Position numbers and translations under genes: made by a program
IMG/VR virus record: IMGVR_UViG_3300027708_000012
Span: 281,370-345,369 of that record
Strand: one strand, 5' to 3'
Length of the DNA: 64,000 nucleotides
The notes under the pieces: generated by a model
Databases searched by the model: none
What the model was told of the DNA's origin: nothing
Seen by the model: the letters and a program-made list of their open reading frames with translations, nothing else
Shown: positions 1,684-53,204 of the stretch, in pieces
How the letters are laid out: the number at the start of each line of letters is the position of its first letter
Numbering within the stretch: position 1 is the first letter of the stretch

Positions 1684-1707
1684 AAAGAAACCCGCCGAAG
1701 CGGGTTC
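1684..1707 (-). terminator. Rho-independent terminator after tmRNA
   Basis: GAACCCGC-TTCG-GCGGGTTTCTTT on minus strand. Confidence 0.8.
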
Positions 1708-1716
1708 TACTATTTT

Positions 1717-2080
1717 TGGTGACAAAGCATAGTTGCTTCGCGAGGGCAGTTTTTTAGGCTGCTAATGCAAATTCTGCATCATTGGCAGAAGCCAATGTTA
1801 CTGGAACTTGAAAATACTCGAATGTAGATGTTTTAGCATTTACTTTAATTTGCTTGATTTACAGTCATCGCCTACTGAGTTGCCGTCTTCAATATCTAAC
1901 CCCGTCGAAACCATGGCAGGCCCATCATAAACACACTCAAATCTGAAAGGTGTCGCCTGTGACGCCTTGTGTTTATAACACCACCACTCGGGACTCAAAC
2001 CCGCATGTGTTTATGGTGGACCTGGCGGGAGTCGAACCCGCGTCCGAGATTCCTTCTATCCAAAGGAATTACAACTATTT
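1717..2080 (-). ncRNA. ssrA: Circularly permuted (two-piece) tmRNA
   Basis: Minus strand order: acceptor piece ending GCGGGTTCGACTCCCGCCAGGTCCACCA (CCA at 2014), 90-nt spacer, then 5' piece GGGCCTGCCATGGTTTCGACGGG (1923). Acceptor stem GGGCCTG/CAGGTCC has G3.U70. Tag frame ends ANDAEFALAA* at 1754. Confidence 0.92.
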
Positions 2081-2092
2081 CATTTAACCCAA

Positions 2093-2296
2093 TTACTTGG
2101 GTTGAATATTTGCTGCCTGCAAGCCTTTTTGACCTTGTACCACATCAAATGTCACTGATTGATTCTCTTGCAGAACTTTGAATCCTGATGTTTGAATCGC
2201 TGAGTAGTGTGCGAAAAGATCCTCGCCGCCGCCGTCTGGAGTAATAAACCCAAAACCTTTGGTTTCATTAAACCATTTTACTTTACCTGTTGCCAT
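2093..2296 (-). CDS. cspA: Cold-shock domain protein
   Basis: [21 protein letters not shown]...DLFAHYSAI...GLQAANI; RNP1/RNP2 motifs. Confidence 0.95.
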
Positions 2297-2404
2297 TTAC
2301 TTAATTTCCTGTTAAAACACTATTATAGTGTATTTTATTTATCAGAGCAAACATTTTGGCTAGAAAAACTAAATACTAGTACATTAAACACCGGGAGCGA
2401 ATCG

Positions 2405-45744: not shown

Positions 45745-46629
45745 TTAAAAAGTTAAACCAAAACTAGGGTTTAGTCGCCATATGTATAGGCTGCTAGTAG
45801 AAAGTTCATTGTCTGTTAATACTTTTGCCACAGCTTGTACAAAGTTATACGGATAGTTACAGCTTTGAATTCTGCCGTCGCCGCAATAGCATAATGAATC
45901 TCCAGCTACACCCGAAAAGTCAACATCACCAAAGAATCCGTTACCTTCTGGAAGGAATGGTTCAGCATCATCTGCTACGGCAAATGTAAAACAGTCATAA
46001 CCAAGATCAACATACACATAACCGATTGAGGTACCGCCATCATACACTGTGGTAGTAGCTGTGCTGTTAAACTTCACATAAGTTGTTGTACATTCTGTAA
46101 CAAAGTGTTGGTCATAAAGATTGCAATTGTAACCATTTCCAACATCGGCCACACGCACTGGATCACCAACATTGAATGGCGGCGTTGGTTGTTCTACAAA
46201 TTCTAGTTTGGCAATGGTGCCGTCGCCTGTAGCTCTAGAAACATATATATTCTCACTAAAATATGTTGGCTTAAAAGCATACCAAGGACTTGCTTGATTC
46301 AATGGGCTGGTTGCTGAGTTTTGTGGTTCGCCCACATAGAACAATTCTGCTCCTCCGCCACCGCCTCCGCGGATATCGCCGTTGCCTTCTGTAGGAGCAT
46401 CAATACCCCCTATCATACCACCTTGCTGAATAGCACGAACCATTTGATAGTACAAACTGTTGCTGTCTTGCCAGTTAGCGGCAAGGCCGTAGTCTTGTTC
46501 TATATGTAAACTGTAAAATGCTAGTTTTCTTGTACCGAAGTTTGAACTTGCGGCTGTTCTGCGGTAGTTAAGGGCGGTTATGTTGTTACTGCTACCTTGT
46601 GTGATTTGATCACCTGCATATTTTGGCAT
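45745..46629 (-). CDS. Paralog 4 of tandem FGTR family, with inserted beta domain
   Basis: Start MPKYAG at 46629; LNYRR..SNFGTRKLAF...MVRAIQ...AELFYVG. Confidence 0.8.
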   Translation of the reverse strand: MPKYAGDQITQGSSNNITALNYRRTAASSNFGTRKLAFYSLHIEQDYGLAANWQDSNSLYYQMVRAIQQGGMIGGIDAPTEGNGDIRGGGGGGAELFYVGEPQNSATSPLNQASPWYAFKPTYFSENIYVSRATGDGTIAKLEFVEQPTPPFNVGDPVRVADVGNGYNCNLYDQHFVTECTTTYVKFNSTATTTVYDGGTSIGYVYVDLGYDCFTFAVADDAEPFLPEGNGFFGDVDFSGVAGDSLCYCGDGRIQSCNYPYNFVQAVAKVLTDNELSTSSLYIWRLNPSFGLTF

Positions 46630-46718
46630 TAATTTCTCCCGAATGCGTTTCAAGTATTTATGTGTTCCAGTCAACAAAAAAGGATCCTCAGATCCTTTAG
46701 TGTTCAGTCCCGTAAGGA

Positions 46719-47276
46719 TTAAGAATTGTAAAATGCTTTCAAGTTTGGATCTGGGTTGATGGGTGAATTCTCAACATATTCAAACTTGGTGTAGTACTCT
46801 TGGTAGTCAGAATCAGTAGTCCAACCATAGTCGCCGCTGACTGCTGGATTTTCTCCCAAGCCGCCCAGCAAGTACACTTCTTGCACACTAATGTCATCAC
46901 CATCCACACCAGCTAGAGCTTCTCTTAGAGCATCTTGTAGTGTGGTGGCTTTGGCATTGTAGCCGCTGCCTGGATTGCTTTCGTCCAACGCAAGATTGTT
47001 GCCGTCGTTGAATGTGTCTTCAAACACGCCCACTGTGATACGACCATGATTGTAACCCACATGTGGAGCACCAATGATGGCAATTTCAGCACGAGTTTGA
47101 ATGGTGTCGATCACTGTGTTCAGTGTTGACATAACAATATCGCTAGAGTTTGACTGGGCACTGAAGCGAATTTGTCCAATGTTGAACCATACTACTTTGC
47201 GTGAGCCAAAACGGCTGTATGGCACTTGTTGTGTGCGGTAATTGGCCGCTACACTTGTTCCGATTAATGATGGCAT
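46719..47276 (-). CDS. Paralog 3 of tandem FGTR family
   Basis: VAANYR..SRFGSRKVVWF...TIQTRAEIAIIG. Confidence 0.8.
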   Translation of the reverse strand: MPSLIGTSVAANYRTQQVPYSRFGSRKVVWFNIGQIRFSAQSNSSDIVMSTLNTVIDTIQTRAEIAIIGAPHVGYNHGRITVGVFEDTFNDGNNLALDESNPGSGYNAKATTLQDALREALAGVDGDDISVQEVYLLGGLGENPAVSGDYGWTTDSDYQEYYTKFEYVENSPINPDPNLKAFYNS

Positions 47277-47364
47277 AATAATCTCCTGTATATGCTGTTT
47301 ATATAGTATTTAGTTCAGCCAACAAAAAAGGATCCTAAGATCCTTTTTGTAGAAGCTATACTGA

Positions 47365-47889
47365 TTAATCAGTGAATAGTTCGTTTTCGTATGAGCTTTC
47401 GCCTTGATAGCTATAAGAACCATCAATTTGAATACTTTGTGGGTTAACATAGTTGATAGCACGGTTCCACTCAGCAAATCCGTTGCCGTATAATACAGCA
47501 AGATCTACGTCAGCATTGTCAACACCTAAACTGGCGTTTACTGATTGACCTAATGTACGAGCAAACGCATTTGCATATGCATAATCTTCGTCACGATTTG
47601 GATCGCTGATGTTACCGTCATTCATTGTGTCAGCATAAACACCAATCATAAATGCGCCATCACTTGGGCTACCAATAATTACTACTTCTGCTTGAGCTTG
47701 GATACCACGAACTGCCTTGGCAAAATTGCTGTTTGGCGCATTAGCGTTGAGTGCAAGATCAACACCGTTAACGTGTACTTTCAAGAATTGGATTTGTCTT
47801 GTAGCTAGGCGTGTTGTTGGTGCAACACGTAGATAGTTAGCTACCACTGTTGGATTGTTTGCGATTTGATCGCCGTTGTATTGTCCCAT
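47365..47889 (-). CDS. Paralog 2 of tandem FGTR family
   Basis: VVANYLR..TRLATRQIQF...AVRGIQAQAEVVIIG. Confidence 0.8.
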   Translation of the reverse strand: MGQYNGDQIANNPTVVANYLRVAPTTRLATRQIQFLKVHVNGVDLALNANAPNSNFAKAVRGIQAQAEVVIIGSPSDGAFMIGVYADTMNDGNISDPNRDEDYAYANAFARTLGQSVNASLGVDNADVDLAVLYGNGFAEWNRAINYVNPQSIQIDGSYSYQGESSYENELFTD

Positions 47890-47997
47890 ATTGTTCTCCT
47901 AATAGGTAATCACGCTCTGTGATTGTTGTATTGTATTTATACCAGCCAACAAAAAAGGGCTACAAGAGCCCTAGTTTGCTTCCCATCCCTTTGAGAA

Positions 47998-48576
47998 TTA
48001 ATACTCGTAACCTGGTTGTACAAGTGCTGTACCAATTGGGAATGTTGGCTGTACTGTAACACCGCTATCACCAGTTGCATCGATAACTGCCTGTTGAATT
48101 GTACGGGCATTGCCATTGGCCATGCTAGCGTGTTGCTCATCAGCGTTCATGCTGCCTGCTGTGTCAACATAGATACCTACGATAAACTTGGCTTTTTGGT
48201 TGGTACCAGCTGAGCCTGTAAAAGCAACTTTACCAACAAAGCAAACTTCAGCTGCCAATTGAACGCCGCTTACTGCTTTGTAAATTGCACTGTTTGTTTT
48301 GAAGATTTCACTTTCTGGAATTACAACATTGCCAGAAGCATCCATGATTTCGTATGTTTCACCAGTTCCGCCTGTATTGTTGTTATCGCTAACATCAACA
48401 TAGCCTTCTGCGGTGTTTGTATTTGTTGATAGGTTCTCAACAGCTAAGAAAGCAATTTGGCGTGTGCCAAAATTGCTGAATGGGCTCATTGCACGACGAT
48501 AGTTGGCTGCAACACCTGTAGCTGCTGTGCCGCCGTCTCCGGCTTGTCCGATTAAATTACCTGAATACTGTGCCAT
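47998..48576 (-). CDS. Paralog 1 of tandem FGTR family
   Basis: VAANYRR..SNFGTRQIAF...AVSGVQLAAEVCFVG. Confidence 0.8.
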   Translation of the reverse strand: MAQYSGNLIGQAGDGGTAATGVAANYRRAMSPFSNFGTRQIAFLAVENLSTNTNTAEGYVDVSDNNNTGGTGETYEIMDASGNVVIPESEIFKTNSAIYKAVSGVQLAAEVCFVGKVAFTGSAGTNQKAKFIVGIYVDTAGSMNADEQHASMANGNARTIQQAVIDATGDSGVTVQPTFPIGTALVQPGYEY

Positions 48577-48921: not shown

Positions 48922-48984
48922 TATTGTTCTCTTTATACGTTATTTATTTGATTATACAGTCTAATTATCATTAGATCAATAAGG

Positions 48985-49013
48985 TTGATAAATGTTGCGG
49001 TGCAATGTATAAT
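48985..49013 (+). promoter_or_regulatory. sigma70 promoter with palindromic TTGC-N3-GCAA (PhaR-like) operator in the spacer
   Basis: TTGATA-aatgTTGCggtGCAAtg-TATAAT. Confidence 0.6.
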
Positions 49014-49083
49014 GACATAAATACTCAGTAGAAACACTGATAACGTTTTTACTGATTTACACACACCAAAGGAAAAACACAAA

Positions 49084-49239
49084 ATGTTAAAATCTATCAA
49101 AACGCTCTTACAAAGAGTATTACATCAACCAACAGGCATCGAAGCCTTTATCGCAAGTAAAAATCCTCAAAATTGTGCAGATGTTGAGCATTGGATGCGA
49201 GTATACACTCAACGCAATGGAGGTCAATATGGCTTCTAA
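49084..49239 (+). CDS. Small protein, DUF3563-like (51 aa)
   Basis: MLKSIKTLLQRV...IEAFIASKNPQNCADVEHWMRVY; AAAGGA RBS. Confidence 0.65.
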   Translation: MLKSIKTLLQRVLHQPTGIEAFIASKNPQNCADVEHWMRVYTQRNGGQYGF

Positions 49240-49330
49240 ATTCAAACAATTTTTAAACAATATGATTGATGCTTGGATTGAAGCACGTCGTATGCAAGCC
49301 GATGCTTATATTAAAAGCAGGGGGCTATAA
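49229..49330 (+). CDS. Micro-protein (33 aa)
   Basis: MASKFKQFLNNMIDAWIEARRMQADAYIKSRGL*; GGAGG RBS. Confidence 0.65.
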   Translation: MASKFKQFLNNMIDAWIEARRMQADAYIKSRGL

Positions 49331-49431
49331 TGAAAGAGTTTGCTAAAAAATGGGAAGAACGCGAGTACGGCCCTAAACTGGCAATGGCTGCTATTACAGC
49401 TATGATCGTTTATTTGGTAGTAGCACAATGA
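49330..49431 (+). CDS. Micro membrane protein (33 aa)
   Basis: MKEFAKKWEEREYGPKLAMAAITAMIVYLVVAQ*; TAATG overlap. Confidence 0.6.
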   Translation: MKEFAKKWEEREYGPKLAMAAITAMIVYLVVAQ

Positions 49432-49505
49432 CCTACTGGTGGCCCGTAAGTGACGAGGAATGGGAACGTCTAAATTTTCCAGAAAAATTCCAGGAAAACA
49501 AATGA
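49428..49505 (+). CDS. Micro-protein (25 aa)
   Basis: MTYWWPVSDEEWERLNFPEKFQENK*; ATGA overlap. Confidence 0.55.
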   Translation: MTYWWPVSDEEWERLNFPEKFQENK

Positions 49506-49603
49506 ACTTCATTGACACACTATTAATGTTGCTGCGTTGGAAACAAGATGGCTGGGATGTACATCCTATAAATCTTGACTCTGAGTTTAGCGGCTGGTTC
49601 TAA
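49502..49603 (+). CDS. Micro-protein (33 aa)
   Basis: MNFIDTLLMLLRWKQDGWDVHPINLDSEFSGWF*; ATGA overlap, AGGA RBS. Confidence 0.6.
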   Translation: MNFIDTLLMLLRWKQDGWDVHPINLDSEFSGWF

Positions 49604-49618
49604 CCAATAAATACTGGC

Positions 49619-50194
49619 ATGAAACTAGTGTATATACACGGCGCCAATGCCACCAGCGAAAGCTTCAACTATATCAAGAGTAAACTTGGTACGGGAATAG
49701 ACATTGACTACGACAGCCGCAATGGGTTTGAAAACAACCTAAAAGACATGCAGGCTGTGTTGCAAGATCATAAAGATCTAGTATTCGTTGCACACAGTTT
49801 GGGCGGTATATACGCATTGCATTTGGCCAATACTATGCCAGCCGCAATTAAGGGTGCTGTAACATTAAGCACTCCGTATGGTGGCGCTGAAGTAGCAGAT
49901 TATGCTCAATACTTTTTGCCATTCAGCAGACTGATGCGTGACATTGGTCCTAGCTCGTGGGTAATGAAGCAGGCGAGCCGTATCAAGATACAGCATCCGT
50001 GGACTAACATTGTTACTGTGAAAGGGCAAAGTCCTTTTATGCATGAGCCCAACGATGGTGTGGTGACCATTGCCAGTCAAAAGCATCATGCAGATATGGA
50101 ATTAGTAGAAGTGGATTGTAATCACTATGAAGTTGTGCTCAGTGACGTGGTTGTTAAACTTATTAAAGAAAGAGTAAACAAGTTTAAGAAATAA
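49619..50194 (+). CDS. Alpha/beta hydrolase (lipase/esterase)
   Basis: YIHGAN, AHSLGG nucleophile elbow, NDGVV, NH. Confidence 0.9.
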   Translation: MKLVYIHGANATSESFNYIKSKLGTGIDIDYDSRNGFENNLKDMQAVLQDHKDLVFVAHSLGGIYALHLANTMPAAIKGAVTLSTPYGGAEVADYAQYFLPFSRLMRDIGPSSWVMKQASRIKIQHPWTNIVTVKGQSPFMHEPNDGVVTIASQKHHADMELVEVDCNHYEVVLSDVVVKLIKERVNKFKK

Positions 50195-50290
50195 GTCATT
50201 CAGCTTTACACACAGTTTTGTATACTGTATAATAAATACATAGACAGCAATAATGCTGTTATACACAAACATACACACAAGGAGAAAAAT

Positions 50291-50506
50291 ATGTTTACAT
50301 TTGAATCAATCATCGACACCGTTACAGGTGCTCAAACTAGGTTTGTAGAAACTTATGTTACAGACAAGAAAGTTAAAGCTGAAGTTACTAAGCTAATTGA
50401 AGCACAAGCCGCTTTCACAAAAACCACCTATACTAACACATTGGAACTTGCTCAATCAGCAGTTAAGAATTTCAACGAATTAGTTTACTCTAAGAAAGGT
50501 GCTTAA
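50291..50506 (+). CDS. Small amphipathic helical protein, phasin-like
   Basis: IIDTVTGAQTRFVETYV...LIEAQAAFTK; AAGGAG RBS; promoter TTTACA-17-TATAAT at 50205-50233. Confidence 0.55.
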   Translation: MFTFESIIDTVTGAQTRFVETYVTDKKVKAEVTKLIEAQAAFTKTTYTNTLELAQSAVKNFNELVYSKKGA

Positions 50507-50507
50507 T

Positions 50508-50774
50508 ATGTCATTCGAAACACCAAAACTACCAGAAGTTAAATTCAGCAAGAACGGCTACGAAATCCGCACAGACGTGTTGTCCATGGCTAAAGATGCT
50601 GTTATGGAAGAATACCATAGCAAGTTCAAGGGCTGGGAAATGTCAGTTGCTCGTGATGAGAAGACTGGACAAGTTGTAACCCGAGTAGATATGCCAGAGT
50701 TTCCAGGTCTAGACAAGATCATGGAAGCCGCTGAAAAGTTCTATGGTTTCGTCAATACCGGAACCAAGAAATAA
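50508..50774 (+). CDS. Conserved phage hypothetical protein
   Basis: KNGYEIRTDVLSMAK...FPGLDKIMEAAEKFYGFV. Confidence 0.75.
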   Translation: MSFETPKLPEVKFSKNGYEIRTDVLSMAKDAVMEEYHSKFKGWEMSVARDEKTGQVVTRVDMPEFPGLDKIMEAAEKFYGFVNTGTKK

Positions 50775-50810: not shown

Positions 50811-50840
50811 CAAAAAGGACCTTAAAGGTCCTTTTTCTTT
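50811..50840. terminator. Bidirectional terminator between convergent genes
   Basis: AAAAAGGACC-TTAAA-GGTCCTTTTT. Confidence 0.8.
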
Positions 50841-50852
50841 GAGCACACTATT

Positions 50853-53204
50853 TTAAGGAGCAGGCCCGTTAGTGAACGTGTAAGTTCCAGATCCTTGTAA
50901 GATAGTTTGATCAATTGAAACAGTGAATTGGCTGTCGTTTACAATGTTTGTGATACTGGTCACTGTGGCCACATCTGATATGCCAGGTCCCGACACATAC
51001 CAACCTGCCATTTGATCTGGAGGAACAGTCGGACCCATGCCACCAAATCCTATACTAATATAGATATTGGAAGATGCTTGTCCAGCTGTAAAGTTACTGA
51101 CAAACGAGTAAGTTGTTGCCGGTGTTGGATTGAACAGTCCGGCTTGTTGTGCTGTATATAACTGTGTAACTTCACTGTTACTTAAAGCTCTACTGTAGTA
51201 GATAAAGTTGTACCAAGTACTTTCTAGAAAAGCACCTGTGCCTAACTCTCCCTCGACCAATGCACCCAAGATCATGTTAGTACCTGCATCAGTTGCAGGA
51301 AACCCGTTAGCTCCTCTTGGTGCTCCCACGTTGGCCCATGCAGTTCCGTTCACAAATATATCAATGCTACCCGTGTTTGCAATGTTGTCCAGTTTCATTC
51401 TAATGGTAAAGAAAGATGGACCATATGTGTGCCAGCCAGATCCAGTCATGTCTATGGCGGCTGTTCCAGTTCCTGGAGAAGTAATCTCAATGTGTGTGGC
51501 ATCAGTCCAATAGGCTCTCAACCCTGCATAAGCACCACTTTGACTACAGTCAAAGATACCTTGTGGGAATGTGCCTGTGGGATTCAATCTGGCTGTAAAG
51601 GCCAAGGTAAAATCGCCAGGCGTCATGTGTATTGGAGTTTGAATATAGCTGGTAGATCCGTCACCTGAATAACCAATTGTACCATTACCGCCAAGAGAAT
51701 AAGTGGCTAGATGATAAAATTTGGCCCATGAGTAACCGCTGGCTTCTGGCCATATGATCGGGTCACCACCAAACTGTCCGGCACCTGGCGCATTCCATCT
51801 TCCCACGATGTTGCCTGTTGGCACACTGGCTGGAGGTGGTGGAGGTGGTGGAGGTGGAACATGTGCAGATATTGTTGTTGTTCCTGTAACTCCATCTTGG
51901 TACGCTGAGACTGTGCCCGATTCCACAGCATTGGCAGGAATAGTTACTAAACCAGTAGAGTCGATGCTGAGGTATTCAGTATCAATGCTCCAACTTGCTG
52001 AATAAGTAAGATCTTGGTTTGAACTGTCATCATAGTAACCTGTGGCCGACATCTGTACACTGTTAGTGATGCTGGAATCAATGTCTTGATTGGCAGGACT
52101 GACATCTATACTCATTAGGGTAGGATTGAACGGAGGTGGAGGTGGTGGTGGCGGAGGAGGTGGTGTTTGGCTGGTGTCGTTTACAGTAACCGTAAATGAG
52201 GTCACCTGCGTACCCCCATATTGGCCGTAATTGCCAGTATACAAATACACACCATACTGTTGCGGATTTGCTATAGCAGTTGTGTTATCTGCTGATATAG
52301 TGATCTCAAACGATGCTGCGTTGGAGTTGATTGTAACTGTGCCAGAGCCGCCAGTAAATCTTCCACTAGTGCCTGCGTTGAAGTTGTCCGCAGTTTGCCA
52401 ATACAATGTGGTGCCATCTGCAACACTTGTTGTAGAGACATTGAATGTTAATGGTACACCTTCGTCTACACTGCTAACTGAGCCTGCTGTATCTAGAGAG
52501 TAAGTTGGAGCTGGAGGCAGAGCATATAAACTGGCTTGACTGTTGTACTGACTAACAATTTGTGATAGATTCAAAGCTGACTCTTGGTACCGTATTTGGA
52601 AAATAGTACCGTGCAACTTGTCGCCCGTGCTGCCGTATCGTGCTCCAATCCACAAGGGATTGGACCAACCTGTGTTGGCAAATGCTAGTGTACCTGATGC
52701 CGCCTGTGCACCATTGCGATAAATCACTAGGCTGGGGCCGTGATAGACAAAGTCCCACCACGCACGGCCAGCAACAGTGCCTGTATAGCTGATGCTGCCA
52801 TAGTCTAGGAATATGCCAGCTGATAGGCCTGAGCCATCGGGTGCCACGTAGCTAAAGATGCTGGTGTTGACACCGCCACTGTATAGGCTGTTCCAGCTGG
52901 GCGTTACAGGCTCAAAGTCTGCGGCAAAGCTCAGAGTAAATGTAGCGTTGGTATTTGTTATATCTTGTATTTCAATATAGCCGTCACCCGTCAGTTGCAC
53001 CCCACCGCCATAGCTGGCATCATAGTACCAAGTGCCCACTATGGCCGCAACAACACCAGAGTTGGAGTCTGCCCAGCTGCCGTAGCCATTGTTGGGCGGG
53101 TTGATCAAGGTGAACACAGTGGGTGGTGGAGGAGGTGGGGGTGGGGGCGGTGGACTGCCCGCAGAATAAGTAGTGGCCGTTATGGCAAATAGTGCGCCCG
53201 ACAT
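50853..53204 (-). CDS. Multidomain adhesin-like virion protein (two LamG/ConA-like and Ig-like domains, poly-Pro linkers)
   Basis: LVIYRNG..LWIGAR..; IFVNG..FIYYSRALSNSEV; SVDEG; three Pro runs. Confidence 0.8.
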   Translation of the reverse strand: MSGALFAITATTYSAGSPPPPPPPPPPPTVFTLINPPNNGYGSWADSNSGVVAAIVGTWYYDASYGGGVQLTGDGYIEIQDITNTNATFTLSFAADFEPVTPSWNSLYSGGVNTSIFSYVAPDGSGLSAGIFLDYGSISYTGTVAGRAWWDFVYHGPSLVIYRNGAQAASGTLAFANTGWSNPLWIGARYGSTGDKLHGTIFQIRYQESALNLSQIVSQYNSQASLYALPPAPTYSLDTAGSVSSVDEGVPLTFNVSTTSVADGTTLYWQTADNFNAGTSGRFTGGSGTVTINSNAASFEITISADNTTAIANPQQYGVYLYTGNYGQYGGTQVTSFTVTVNDTSQTPPPPPPPPPPPFNPTLMSIDVSPANQDIDSSITNSVQMSATGYYDDSSNQDLTYSASWSIDTEYLSIDSTGLVTIPANAVESGTVSAYQDGVTGTTTISAHVPPPPPPPPPASVPTGNIVGRWNAPGAGQFGGDPIIWPEASGYSWAKFYHLATYSLGGNGTIGYSGDGSTSYIQTPIHMTPGDFTLAFTARLNPTGTFPQGIFDCSQSGAYAGLRAYWTDATHIEITSPGTGTAAIDMTGSGWHTYGPSFFTIRMKLDNIANTGSIDIFVNGTAWANVGAPRGANGFPATDAGTNMILGALVEGELGTGAFLESTWYNFIYYSRALSNSEVTQLYTAQQAGLFNPTPATTYSFVSNFTAGQASSNIYISIGFGGMGPTVPPDQMAGWYVSGPGISDVATVTSITNIVNDSQFTVSIDQTILQGSGTYTFTNGPAP

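What the first reader, a model, noticed from the sequence alone, without database searches (positions are those of the whole stretch)
48985..50774. Candidate PHA-granule hijacking island: PhaR-like operator, hydrolase and phasin-like gene
Seen: a plus-strand island in a minus-strand region; TTGC-GGT-GCAA lies in the spacer of a near-consensus sigma70 promoter; downstream are micro-ORFs, a lipase-box hydrolase and an amphipathic 71-aa protein. Known: PhaR represses via TGC-N3-GCA-type boxes and is titrated by PHA granules. Inference: the phage senses host carbon storage and deploys proteins to coat or mobilise it.
Basis: inference. Interest (0 to 1): 0.7.

Follow-up and report, generated by a model that had tools for sequence, protein, structure and literature searches.

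The report
Phage operon with PhaR-type operator
A giant freshwater phage carries a small, separately promoted gene cluster (a lipase-like enzyme, a mini phasin-like protein and a very common 88-residue protein), and its first promoter holds a DNA box that looks like the binding site of PhaR, the bacterial regulator that reports how much storage polyester (PHB) the cell holds; the phage may therefore read its host's carbon reserves, but nothing here shows binding or activity.

Summary
Window 49084-50774 is a plus-strand module inside minus-strand virion genes of a 345-kb T4-like jumbo phage from lakes, whose host is probably a betaproteobacterium.

- **Operator.** The palindrome GTTGCGGTGCAAT sits in the 17-nt spacer of TTGATA-N17-TATAAT. 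A TGC-N3/4-GCA palindrome occupies the same position in 40 of 72 related phage contigs (0.85% in shuffles). The window's N3 form fits published PhaR motifs. It also fits the boxes I found upstream of 47 of 58 real phasin genes (84 boxes against 4.6 expected).
- **71-aa protein.** It is a confident helical hairpin with weak but repeated links to Phasin_2. hhalign gives 55-60% probability, and viral homologues are named "Phasin" in UniProt.
- **Hydrolase.** It is an intact minimal Ser-Asp-His lipase-type enzyme with no link to any PHB depolymerase family.

- Most relatives carry an N4 spacing that real phasin promoters do not use.
- The phasin-like gene has its own strong, box-free promoter.
- Box, hydrolase and phasin-like gene do not co-occur.
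- The phage encodes no other PHA gene.

Verdict: partly supported, and worth an EMSA.

The parts
48985..49013 (+). P1: sigma70-type promoter, TTGATA-N17-TATAAT
   Evidence: 11 of 12 consensus positions. A -35-like TTG is kept in 52 of 72 relatives, an exact TATAAT in 11 of 72 and TAnnnT in 48 of 72.
48994..49006 (.). Palindromic operator GTTGCGGTGCAAT (core TGC-GGT-GCA) in the P1 spacer; a PhaR-type box by sequence
   Evidence: A palindrome is conserved at this position in 40 of 72 relatives. PWM score 14.9 bits. It is the only top-ranking site in the genome that lies in a promoter.
49018..49024 (+). TAAATAC, a T4-type late-promoter-like motif; start of the invariant block TAAATAC-TYR-GTAGAAAC
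   Evidence: Genome-wide, 64 of 72 ATAAATA sites lie within 150 nt upstream of a same-strand ORF. The genome encodes a gp55 homologue. The block is present in at least 120 IMG/VR contigs.
49025..49055 (+). 5' leader stem-loop; GTAGAAAC pairs with GTTTTTAC
   Evidence: -11.4 kcal/mol, z = -3.5. GTAG...CTAC pairing is kept in relatives, and one lineage shows a compensatory TCA/TGA to TTG/CAA change.
49084..49239 (+). ORF1, 51 aa; member of a conserved 50-63 aa family that opens the operon in nearly all relatives
   Evidence: No Pfam or PHROG match.
49229..49330 (+). Micro-ORF, 33 aa (MASKFKQF...); unverified
   Evidence: No family match.
49330..49431 (+). Micro-ORF, 33 aa with a hydrophobic C-terminal segment; unverified
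   Evidence: No family match.
49502..49603 (+). Micro-ORF, 33 aa; DNA conserved at 76-87% in several relatives directly before the hydrolase gene
49608..49614 (+). Second TAAATAC motif, 5 nt before the hydrolase ATG
   Evidence: A relative's RNA-library contig shows the same motif at this place (loose end at 49618).
49619..50194 (+). 191-aa minimal alpha/beta serine hydrolase; HG oxyanion motif, Ser60 in AHSLGG, Asp146 in NDGVV, His169
   Evidence: Pfam Abhydrolase_6, E 5e-7. The triad is invariant, including in Ralstonia phages RP13 and RsoM2USA. The best solved relatives are family I lipases, E about 2e-7. It belongs to a virus-only family of about 190 aa.
50205..50233 (+). P2: TTTACA-N17-TATAAT, overlapping a late motif TAAATAC at 50233-50239
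   Evidence: TATAAT is kept in 44 of 49 relatives. No PhaR-like box in any of the 49.
50243..50260 (+). 5' leader hairpin of the P2 transcript, followed by a CA-rich leader and an AAGGAG Shine-Dalgarno sequence
   Evidence: z = -3.8. The stem sequence differs between relatives while pairing is kept.
50291..50506 (+). 71-aa helical-hairpin protein; mini phasin-like (weak remote similarity)
50508..50774 (+). 88-aa protein of unknown function; start codon one base after the stop of the 71-aa gene; the most widespread gene of the module
   Evidence: 3778 homologues, on contigs of up to 378 kb. Found only in viruses, with no family or solved relative.
50812..50840 (.). Bidirectional intrinsic terminator (11-bp stem, A-run before it and T-run after it) shared with the convergent 783-aa gene
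   Evidence: z = -3.4.

Best explanation
The island is a conserved accessory (moron-like) module, set against the direction of the virion and tail-fibre genes of a T4-like freshwater jumbo phage.

**Anatomy (shown).** It has two transcription units.
- **Unit 1.** P1 drives ORF1, several small ORFs and a catalytically intact minimal lipase-type serine hydrolase.
- **Unit 2.** P2 is strong and followed by a stabilising 5' hairpin, a CA-rich leader and a strong ribosome-binding site. It drives the 71-aa helical hairpin and the 88-aa protein, whose start lies one base after the 71-aa stop. This is the most abundant part in lake RNA libraries.

Both promoters are sigma70-type and also carry the phage's T4-type late motif, so the module can probably be read by host RNA polymerase early and by the gp55-type late machinery later.

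**Regulation (inferred).** The P1 spacer holds a dimer-type operator. In this phage it is a canonical PhaR box. Free host PhaR would sit between -35 and -10 and block sigma70 transcription of unit 1. PhaR drawn onto growing PHB granules would release it. This would couple early expression of the hydrolase operon to the host's PHB state.

**Products (more weakly inferred).** The 71-aa protein may be a cut-down phasin-type amphipathic protein acting on granule or other hydrophobic surfaces. The hydrolase is an esterase or lipase of unknown substrate; PHB or its oligomers are only one possibility.
For: - **Anatomy and synteny:**
- **Operator conservation:** 40 of 72 relatives against 0.85% in shuffles.
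- **Match to published PhaR motifs:** S. meliloti WNWDDN-YGCRNYGCR-NHHWNW, 20 of 21 positions; R. eutropha core TGCRNYGCA.
- **Positive control:** TGC-N3-GCA occurs upstream of 47 of 58 real Phasin_2 genes, 84 boxes against 4.6 expected.
- **PWM:** 14.9 bits, inside the training range and the only top site in a promoter. Nine of 72 relatives reach 11.4 bits, against 0.07% of shuffles.
- **Betaproteobacterial host cues:** beta_tmRNA at 106 bits against a gathering score of 84; tail-fibre relatives in Methylophilales and Limnohabitans phages; hydrolase relatives in Ralstonia phages.
- **Phasin link:**
  - Phasin_2 and TIGR01841 are the families hit by most members in two libraries.
  - hhalign gives 55-60% probability (P about 1e-4), against 7-9% for direction-mismatched controls.
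  - Members score a median 9.4 bits on a phasin HMM, against 5.3 reversed and 1.3 shuffled.
  - Viral clusters in the ESM Atlas are named 'Phasin family protein'.
  - BFVD homologues are named 'Phasin' (37% identity, TM 0.88).
- **Hydrolase triad:**
- **Late system:**
- **RNA depth:** 10-77 over 50180-50750 against 0-9 in the neighbouring stretches, in four lake metatranscriptomes.
Against: - 30 of the 40 conserved palindromes have N4 spacing (for example TGTGCGGTCGCACA). That spacing is not enriched upstream of phasin genes (5 against 3.9 expected). The ancestral binder may therefore not be PhaR.
- Box class does not track the presence of the hydrolase or the 71-aa gene, and identical ORF1 proteins occur with different operators.
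- P2, which drives the phasin-like gene, has no box.
- The window protein itself hits no phasin model at E <= 1.
- The family profile finds nothing in four Cupriavidus/Ralstonia genomes that hold many phasins.
- The family profile also matches designed helical bundles, which warns of composition bias.
- The hydrolase matches no PHB depolymerase family, and the phage has no other PHA gene.
- The host, and whether it has a PhaR, are unknown.
- The RNA-library contigs include related strains, and depth is only a rough measure.
Confidence: 0.4

Rival explanations
1. The palindrome is the operator of a different dimeric regulator, either phage-encoded or a host factor other than PhaR. This regulator would time the early-to-late use of P1. 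The N3 form's match to PhaR boxes would come only from shared TGC/GCA half-sites. The module's products would have nothing to do with PHA: for example an esterase acting on envelope lipids or acylated glycans, and small abundant proteins serving virion assembly or host takeover.
For: - N4 spacing dominates in relatives and is not used at phasin promoters.
- Other lineages hold unrelated sequences at the same place, with the same downstream genes.
- A second sigma70-like promoter in the genome, with TGC-N4-GCA in its spacer, drives an OMP-like gene rather than a PHA gene.
- The phage has no other PHA gene.
- The hydrolase is closest to lipases.
- The module sits among tail-fibre and virion genes and carries late motifs.
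Against: - No candidate regulator was identified; ORF1 does not co-vary with operator class.
- Both half-site flavours in the phages (GTTGC and TGTGC) are the same two flavours that dominate at real phasin promoters.
- The phasin signal of the 71-aa family recurs in independent tools.
Confidence: 0.4
2. The module is simply part of the late structural programme. The small, abundant 71-aa and 88-aa proteins would be virion, decoration, scaffold or tail-fibre-chaperone proteins (compare T4 gp57A or Soc in size and abundance). The sigma70-like hexamers would be by-products of AT-rich late promoters.
For: - Position between virion structural and tail-fibre-like genes.
- TAAATAC late motifs at all three gene starts and a gp55 homologue.
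- High RNA depth, as expected for structural genes.
- p88 is nearly universal in related jumbo phages.
Against: - The flanking structural genes have much lower depth in the same RNA libraries.
- P2's -35 and -10 hexamers with 17-nt spacing are conserved in relatives that lack the late motif: TATAAT in 44 of 49, TAAATA in 13 of 49.
- The module is on the opposite strand, with modular gene content, as morons are.
- There is no similarity to any known virion protein.
Confidence: 0.12
3. The palindrome binds no protein. It would be a chance or purely structural feature (a small hairpin or cruciform) of the promoter spacer.
For: - Within this genome the number of PhaR-like sites is at chance level.
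- TGC-N3/4-GCA is not enriched in intergenic DNA (10 against 16 expected).
- Loops of 3 or 4 nt would both suit a hairpin.
Against: - The element keeps a fixed position in 34 of 40 relatives, and the core is conserved amid diverged flanks (0.85% in shuffles).
- It lies upstream of both candidate transcription starts, so it would not be in the RNA.
- A stem of 4-5 bp is too weak for a stable DNA structure.
Confidence: 0.08

Closest known systems
PhaR (AniA)-repressed phasin and depolymerase promoters of PHB-accumulating Proteobacteria (R. eutropha phaP1; S. meliloti phaP1/2 and phaZ)
   Same: - Core TGC-RNY-GCA palindrome with T/G-rich outer flanks.
- The box overlaps the core promoter, immediately after the -35 element as reported for S. 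meliloti phaZ.
- Downstream genes include a phasin-like protein and a serine hydrolase.
   Different: - The promoter is on a phage.
- There is one box, not the usual pair.
- Most related phages use an N4 spacing not seen at phasin promoters.
- The phasin-like gene has its own box-free promoter.
- Binding was not tested.
Phasin_2 / TIGR01841 phasins (PhaP)
   Same: - Amphipathic, all-helical and lysine-rich, and apparently highly expressed.
- A weak profile match of residues 30-66 to Phasin_2 positions 54-90, with a shared (L)I.(A/L)Q..(F).K motif.
- Viral homologues carry the name Phasin in UniProt.
   Different: - 71 aa, against about 110-200 aa for phasins.
- No hit to any phasin model at E <= 1 for the window protein.
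- No reciprocal detection in Cupriavidus genomes.
- The family is found only in viruses.
Bacterial family I lipases (Burkholderia/Pseudomonas LipA, PDB 1ys1, 1ex9) and minimal alpha/beta hydrolases (B. subtilis LipA, 1i6w)
   Same: - HG oxyanion motif and a (A/G)HS(L/Q)GG nucleophile elbow.
- A TP(Y/H)xG(A/S)ExAD segment.
- The catalytic Asp in NDGVV, and a late His.
- About 190 aa, like B. subtilis LipA.
   Different: - Only about 63 residues align significantly.
- No lid, calcium site or secretion signal.
- The family is virus-only and its substrate is unknown.
Host nutrient-regulator boxes on phage promoters (for example Pho boxes and NtcA sites in cyanophages; my own knowledge, not checked here)
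   Same: A phage auxiliary operon placed under an operator of a host regulator that reports the cell's physiological state.
   Different: The regulator would be PhaR and the signal stored PHB. I found no paper describing this.
T4 late promoters (TATAAATA) with the gp55 late sigma factor
   Same: An ATAAATA(C) motif lies just upstream of most late-looking genes, and the genome encodes a gp55 homologue.
   Different: Here the motif overlaps sigma70-type promoters in an accessory module. Transcription starts were not mapped.

Membership tests
PhaR/AniA operator | Palindromic core TGC-RNY-GCA (N3 spacing) | tested here: met
   TGC-GGT-GCA at 48996-49004. Published motifs read.
PhaR/AniA operator | Flanks like those of boxes upstream of real phasin genes | tested here: met
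   A PWM built from 43 boxes gives 14.9 bits, within the training range of 11.4-19.3. A near-identical box, GCTGCGGTGCAAT, lies 18 nt before a real phasin gene.
PhaR/AniA operator | Overlaps the core promoter of the regulated gene | tested here: met
   The box lies in the 17-nt spacer of TTGATA-N17-TATAAT.
PhaR/AniA operator | The same box type is conserved in related phages | tested here: inconclusive
   Nine of 72 relatives have a canonical N3 box of at least 11.4 bits. Thirty of 72 have an N4 palindrome, which real phasin promoters do not use.
PhaR/AniA operator | PhaR binds the box and PHB relieves repression; the host encodes PhaR | not testable with these tools
   The host is unknown; only betaproteobacterial cues are available. 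The phage itself has no PHB_acc_N domain.
Phasin (Pfam Phasin_2 PF09361 / NCBIfam TIGR01841) | Match to the family model above its curated cut-off | tested here: not met
   No hit at E <= 1 for the window protein. Three of 54 family members hit weakly (best E 8e-4 and 9e-3).
Phasin (Pfam Phasin_2 PF09361 / NCBIfam TIGR01841) | Profile-to-profile homology to the phasin domain | tested here: inconclusive
   hhalign gives 55-60% probability (P about 1e-4) over 37-39 columns, against 7-9% for controls. The reciprocal genome search found nothing. BFVD homologues are named Phasin.
Phasin (Pfam Phasin_2 PF09361 / NCBIfam TIGR01841) | Amphipathic alpha-helical protein that coats PHA granules | not testable with these tools
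   The helical hairpin is shown. Granule binding needs an experiment.
PHB depolymerase | Membership of a depolymerase family (Esterase_PHB PF10503, PHB_depo_C PF06850) | tested here: not met
   No match. The best solved relatives are lipases and esterases. Relation to the lipase-like PhaZ7 type was not tested.
PHB depolymerase | Catalytic Ser-Asp-His triad with a lipase box | tested here: met
   Ser60, Asp146 and His169 are invariant. This feature is shared by all alpha/beta serine hydrolases, so it does not discriminate.
PHB depolymerase | Hydrolysis of PHB or 3HB oligomers | not testable with these tools
   An enzyme assay is needed.
T4-type late promoter | TATAAATA-like -10 motif enriched before genes, plus a gp55-type sigma factor | tested here: met
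   64 of 72 ATAAATA sites are upstream of ORFs. For TAAATAC, 37 of 71 sites are, against a mean of 11 of 130 for permuted controls. gp55 homologue, E 1.4e-6.

The most novel reading that the evidence does not exclude
Abundant freshwater jumbo phages of Betaproteobacteria read their host's PHB status through the host's own granule-titrated repressor PhaR. In response they deploy a phage mini-phasin and a minimal esterase that remodel or mobilise the carbon-storage granules during infection.
Probability: 0.25. Interest if true: 0.85.

Novelty: new variant of a known kind. Interest (0 to 1): 0.62.

Why it matters
PHB can make up a large share of the carbon in freshwater and soil Betaproteobacteria. 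How phages deal with this reserve, or exploit it, is essentially undescribed: I found no paper on phage phasins or phage PhaR boxes.

- **A new sensing route.** A phage promoter wired to PhaR would be a new case of a virus sensing host physiology through a host regulator. It would extend the logic known for phosphate and nitrogen regulators to carbon storage.
- **Ecological weight.** The module is very common in lake metagenomes, with thousands of homologues and at least 120 IMG/VR contigs. Any function would therefore matter ecologically.
- **Useful parts regardless.** Even if PhaR is not the binder, the work defines:
  - a conserved operator;
  - two strong, portable promoter-leader units;
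  - a virus-only family of minimal hydrolases;
  - an 88-aa protein that is among the most conserved small genes of these phages and has no known function.

Tried and rejected
1. **Early six-locus alignment.** My first alignment of the P1 region, from six loci, suggested the palindrome was not conserved. The 72-sequence set overturned this.
2. **Palindrome as a general middle-promoter box.** Rejected. It is not enriched in intergenic DNA, and only two sigma70-like spacers in the genome hold it.
3. **ORF1 as an autoregulator.** Unlikely, because identical ORF1 proteins occur with different operators.
4. **Micro-ORFs as remnants of the 138-aa cupin gene of some relatives.** No similarity was found.
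5. **Phage DNA and protein searches.** The phage collection gave no DNA match and no match for the 71-aa protein.
6. **Foldseek of the 71-aa hairpin** against PDB and Swiss-Prot models returned nothing below E 0.6.
7. **Family profile against PDB sequences** hit only designed helical bundles.
8. **hhalign against a single PhaP2 sequence** gave nothing.
9. **Complex prediction for the 71-aa and 88-aa proteins** gave no answer.
10. **Hydrolase model.** It is poor over residues 121-170 (pLDDT 66 overall), so its fold searches returned only generic alpha/beta hydrolases.
11. **Context of distant 71-aa relatives.** Mostly short contigs, uninformative, and their cluster members carried no useful names.
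12. **Rfam** found no known RNA family in the island.
13. **The 88-aa profile** has no solved relative.
Full report
**Setting.** The window is the last 64 kb of a single 345,369-bp contig with 38% G+C. IMG/VR classes it as a virus record about 94% complete. The window DNA is held by freshwater and lake metagenomes.
- The phage encodes a T4 gp55-type late sigma homologue (E 1.4e-6).
- It encodes a permuted tmRNA that passes Rfam's betaproteobacterial model (106 bits against a gathering score of 84).
- Its tail-fibre protein is closest to those of Methylophilales and Limnohabitans phages.
- The hydrolase's only cultured relatives are in Ralstonia phages and one Vibrio phage.

A betaproteobacterial host is therefore likely but not shown.

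**Observation.**
- Plus-strand ORFs run from 49084 to 50774, between a minus-strand 85-aa virion structural gene (PHROG 11854) and a minus-strand 783-aa gene.
- P1 is TTGATA (48985), a 17-nt spacer, then TATAAT (49013).
- The 13-mer GTTGCGGTGCAAT (48994-49006) lies in that spacer.

- the 88-aa gene (50508-50774);
- a second promoter, P2 (TTTACA-N17-TATAAT, 50205-50233);
- a bidirectional terminator (50812-50840);
- three copies of TAAATAC (49018, 49608, 50233).

**Late promoters.** ATAAATA occurs 72 times in the genome, and 64 of those sites lie within 150 nt upstream of a same-strand ORF. TAAATAC occurs 71 times, with 37 upstream of ORFs; permuted controls average 130 sites with 11 upstream. 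Each of the four paralogous structural genes to the left of the island is preceded by a terminator and then this motif. Together with the gp55 homologue, this fits a T4-type late system. The island therefore carries both sigma70-type and late-type signals.

**The module is conserved and modular.**
- Metagenomic contigs show the same layout.
- A scan of IMG/VR with the invariant block TAAATAC-TYR-GTAGAAAC found at least 120 contigs, and 80 loci were fetched.
- ORF1 and the 88-aa gene are nearly universal.
- The hydrolase is frequent, and a 138-aa cupin gene is occasional.
- The 71-aa gene is present only in a subset, always directly before the 88-aa gene.

**The operator.** My first six-locus alignment suggested the palindrome was not conserved. 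That was wrong.
- Of 72 unique P1 regions, 40 carry exact TGC-N3/4-GCA. In 34 of these the box ends 11-13 nt before TAAATAC.
- A further 12 regions match five of the six core bases.
- Shuffled controls give 0.85%.
- Thirty of the 40 are N4 (typically TGTGCGGTCGCACA) and ten are N3 (GTTGC-NNN-GCAA or CTGC-NNN-GCAG).
- Other lineages hold unrelated sequences at the same place, yet identical ORF1 proteins follow different operators. ORF1 is therefore unlikely to be the binder.
- Within this genome the motif is not enriched in intergenic DNA. Only one other sigma70-like spacer holds it, in front of an OMP-like gene.

**Is it a PhaR box?**
- Published motifs are YGCRNYGCR with AT-rich arms for S. 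meliloti (PMC12542648) and YTKNTGCRNYGCANMAR for R. eutropha (PMC12849132).
- The window 21-mer matches 20 of 21 positions of the first and 13 of 17 of the second.
- As a positive control I took 250-300 nt upstream of 58 real Phasin_2 genes from Pseudomonadota and Burkholderiales. Of these, 47 have TGC-N3-GCA, giving 84 boxes against 4.6 expected. N4 is at chance, 5 against 3.9.
- A PWM built from those boxes scores the window box at 14.9 bits (training range 11.4-19.3). It ranks fourth in the genome and is the only top site in a promoter.
- Nine of 72 relatives reach 11.4 bits, against 0.07% of shuffles.

In this phage the box is therefore sequence-wise a canonical PhaR box, placed just after the -35 element as reported for S. 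meliloti phaZ. The N4 majority is not canonical, although its half-sites (TGTGCG/CGCACA) are the commonest PhaR half-sites.

**The 71-aa protein.**
- It has 118 close clusters and, by profile, 109 clusters at 50% identity. All are small proteins.
- AlphaFold gives a helix 4-22, a turn and a helix 26-69, with pLDDT 90.5.
- The window protein hits no Pfam or NCBIfam model.
- Among 54 family members, the families hit by most members are Phasin_2 (three members, best E 8e-4) and TIGR01841 phasin (three members, best E 9e-3).
- hhalign against my own 46-sequence Phasin_2 alignment gives 55% probability (P 1.2e-4). Direction-mismatched controls give 7-9%.
- Members score a median 9.4 bits on a phasin HMM, against 5.3 reversed and 1.3 shuffled.
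- ESM Atlas neighbours are viral clusters named 'Phasin family protein'.
- The best BFVD matches include proteins of uncultured phages that UniProt names 'Phasin' (37% identity, TM 0.88) and 'Phasin domain-containing protein'.

Three results count against this link:
- The family profile finds nothing in four phasin-rich Cupriavidus/Ralstonia genomes.
- It matches designed helical bundles in the PDB.
- The protein is half the size of the smallest phasins.

I rate it as a plausible remote, truncated relative of phasins, not a demonstrated one.

**The hydrolase.**
- The HG motif, Ser60 (AHSLGG), Asp146 (NDGVV) and His169 are invariant, including in Ralstonia phage homologues at 30-40% identity.
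- Profile search of solved structures puts Burkholderia and Pseudomonas family I lipases first (E about 2e-7 over 63 residues), followed by BioH and B. subtilis LipA.
- It belongs to a large virus-only family of about 190 aa.
- It matches neither Esterase_PHB nor PHB_depo_C.
- The phage has no PhaC, PhaR or other phasin model hit.
- Its substrate is unknown.

**Expression.** In four lake metatranscriptomes the contig depth is 10-77 over the 71-aa and 88-aa genes. It is 0-9 over unit 1 and the flanking structural genes. This is a rough measure that includes related strains.
- P2 is conserved as a sigma70-type promoter (TATAAT in 44 of 49 relatives).
- It is followed by a 5' hairpin whose stem sequence varies while pairing is kept, and by a CA-rich leader.
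- It holds no PhaR-like box in any of the 49 relatives.

**Conclusion.** The PHA-sensing model is plausible for this phage: a canonical box, a likely betaproteobacterial host and a phasin-like protein. It is weakened by the N4 majority, the independent promoter of the phasin-like gene, the lack of co-occurrence among the parts, and a hydrolase with no depolymerase affinity.

I put about 0.4 on a PhaR-linked module and about 0.4 on an operator for another regulator with products unrelated to PHA. The remainder goes to a purely late-structural role or to no protein binding at all.

Noticed in passing
window 1686-2128 (-): Phage-encoded permuted (two-piece) tmRNA. ARAGORN reads the tag as AKTSTFEYFQVPVTLASANDAEFALAA. 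It matches Rfam tmRNA_permuted (126 bits) and beta_tmRNA (106 bits against a gathering score of 84). This is a cue to a betaproteobacterial host.
   Followed up: partly
window 2030-2400 (-): Sub-threshold Rfam match to the cspA thermoregulator (46.5 bits against a gathering score of 78, E 1.6e-10), next to the tmRNA.
   Followed up: no
G000:C1:277800-278433 (-), about 3 kb before the window start: A near-consensus promoter, TTGACT-N18-TATAAT, has TGC-AAAG-GCA in its spacer. It drives a 187-aa protein with a signal peptide and a C-terminal ...YTRSF, which looks like an outer-membrane beta-barrel protein.
   Followed up: partly
G000:C1:105178-105450 (-), outside the window: Homologue of the T4 late sigma factor gp55 (31% identity over residues 22-114, E 1.4e-6).
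   Followed up: partly
window 45745-48576 (-): Four neighbouring genes (310, 185, 174 and 192 aa). The three shorter ones look like paralogues, with N-termini of the type ...ANYRR..FG(T/S)RK. All four are preceded by TAAATAC, and the 310-, 185- and 174-aa genes also have an intrinsic terminator just before it; the genes look like independently transcribed late structural genes.
   Followed up: no
window 50853-53204 (-): 783-aa ORF with several runs of 9-12 prolines acting as linkers between domains. It converges on the island's terminator.
   Followed up: no
window 48941-48947 (-): ATAAATA on the minus strand (TATTTAT on plus), invariant in relatives. It is the likely late promoter of the divergent 85-aa virion structural gene.
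   Followed up: partly
G000:C1:185-7200 (+), outside the window: A dense run of ten near-perfect sigma70 promoters (TTGACA/TTGACT-N17-TATAAT) in the first 7 kb of the genome. This is probably the early region.
   Followed up: no
L003:2923-3339, L006:2993-3409 and other relatives: Some relatives carry a 138-aa Cupin_2 protein between the small ORFs and the hydrolase. It is absent from the window, and no remnant was found.
   Followed up: yes
L081:2951-3553: The contig holding a distant 71-aa relative (P0434) also encodes a malonyl-CoA decarboxylase-family (PF05292) protein beside ClpP, SNase and SprT-like genes.
   Followed up: no
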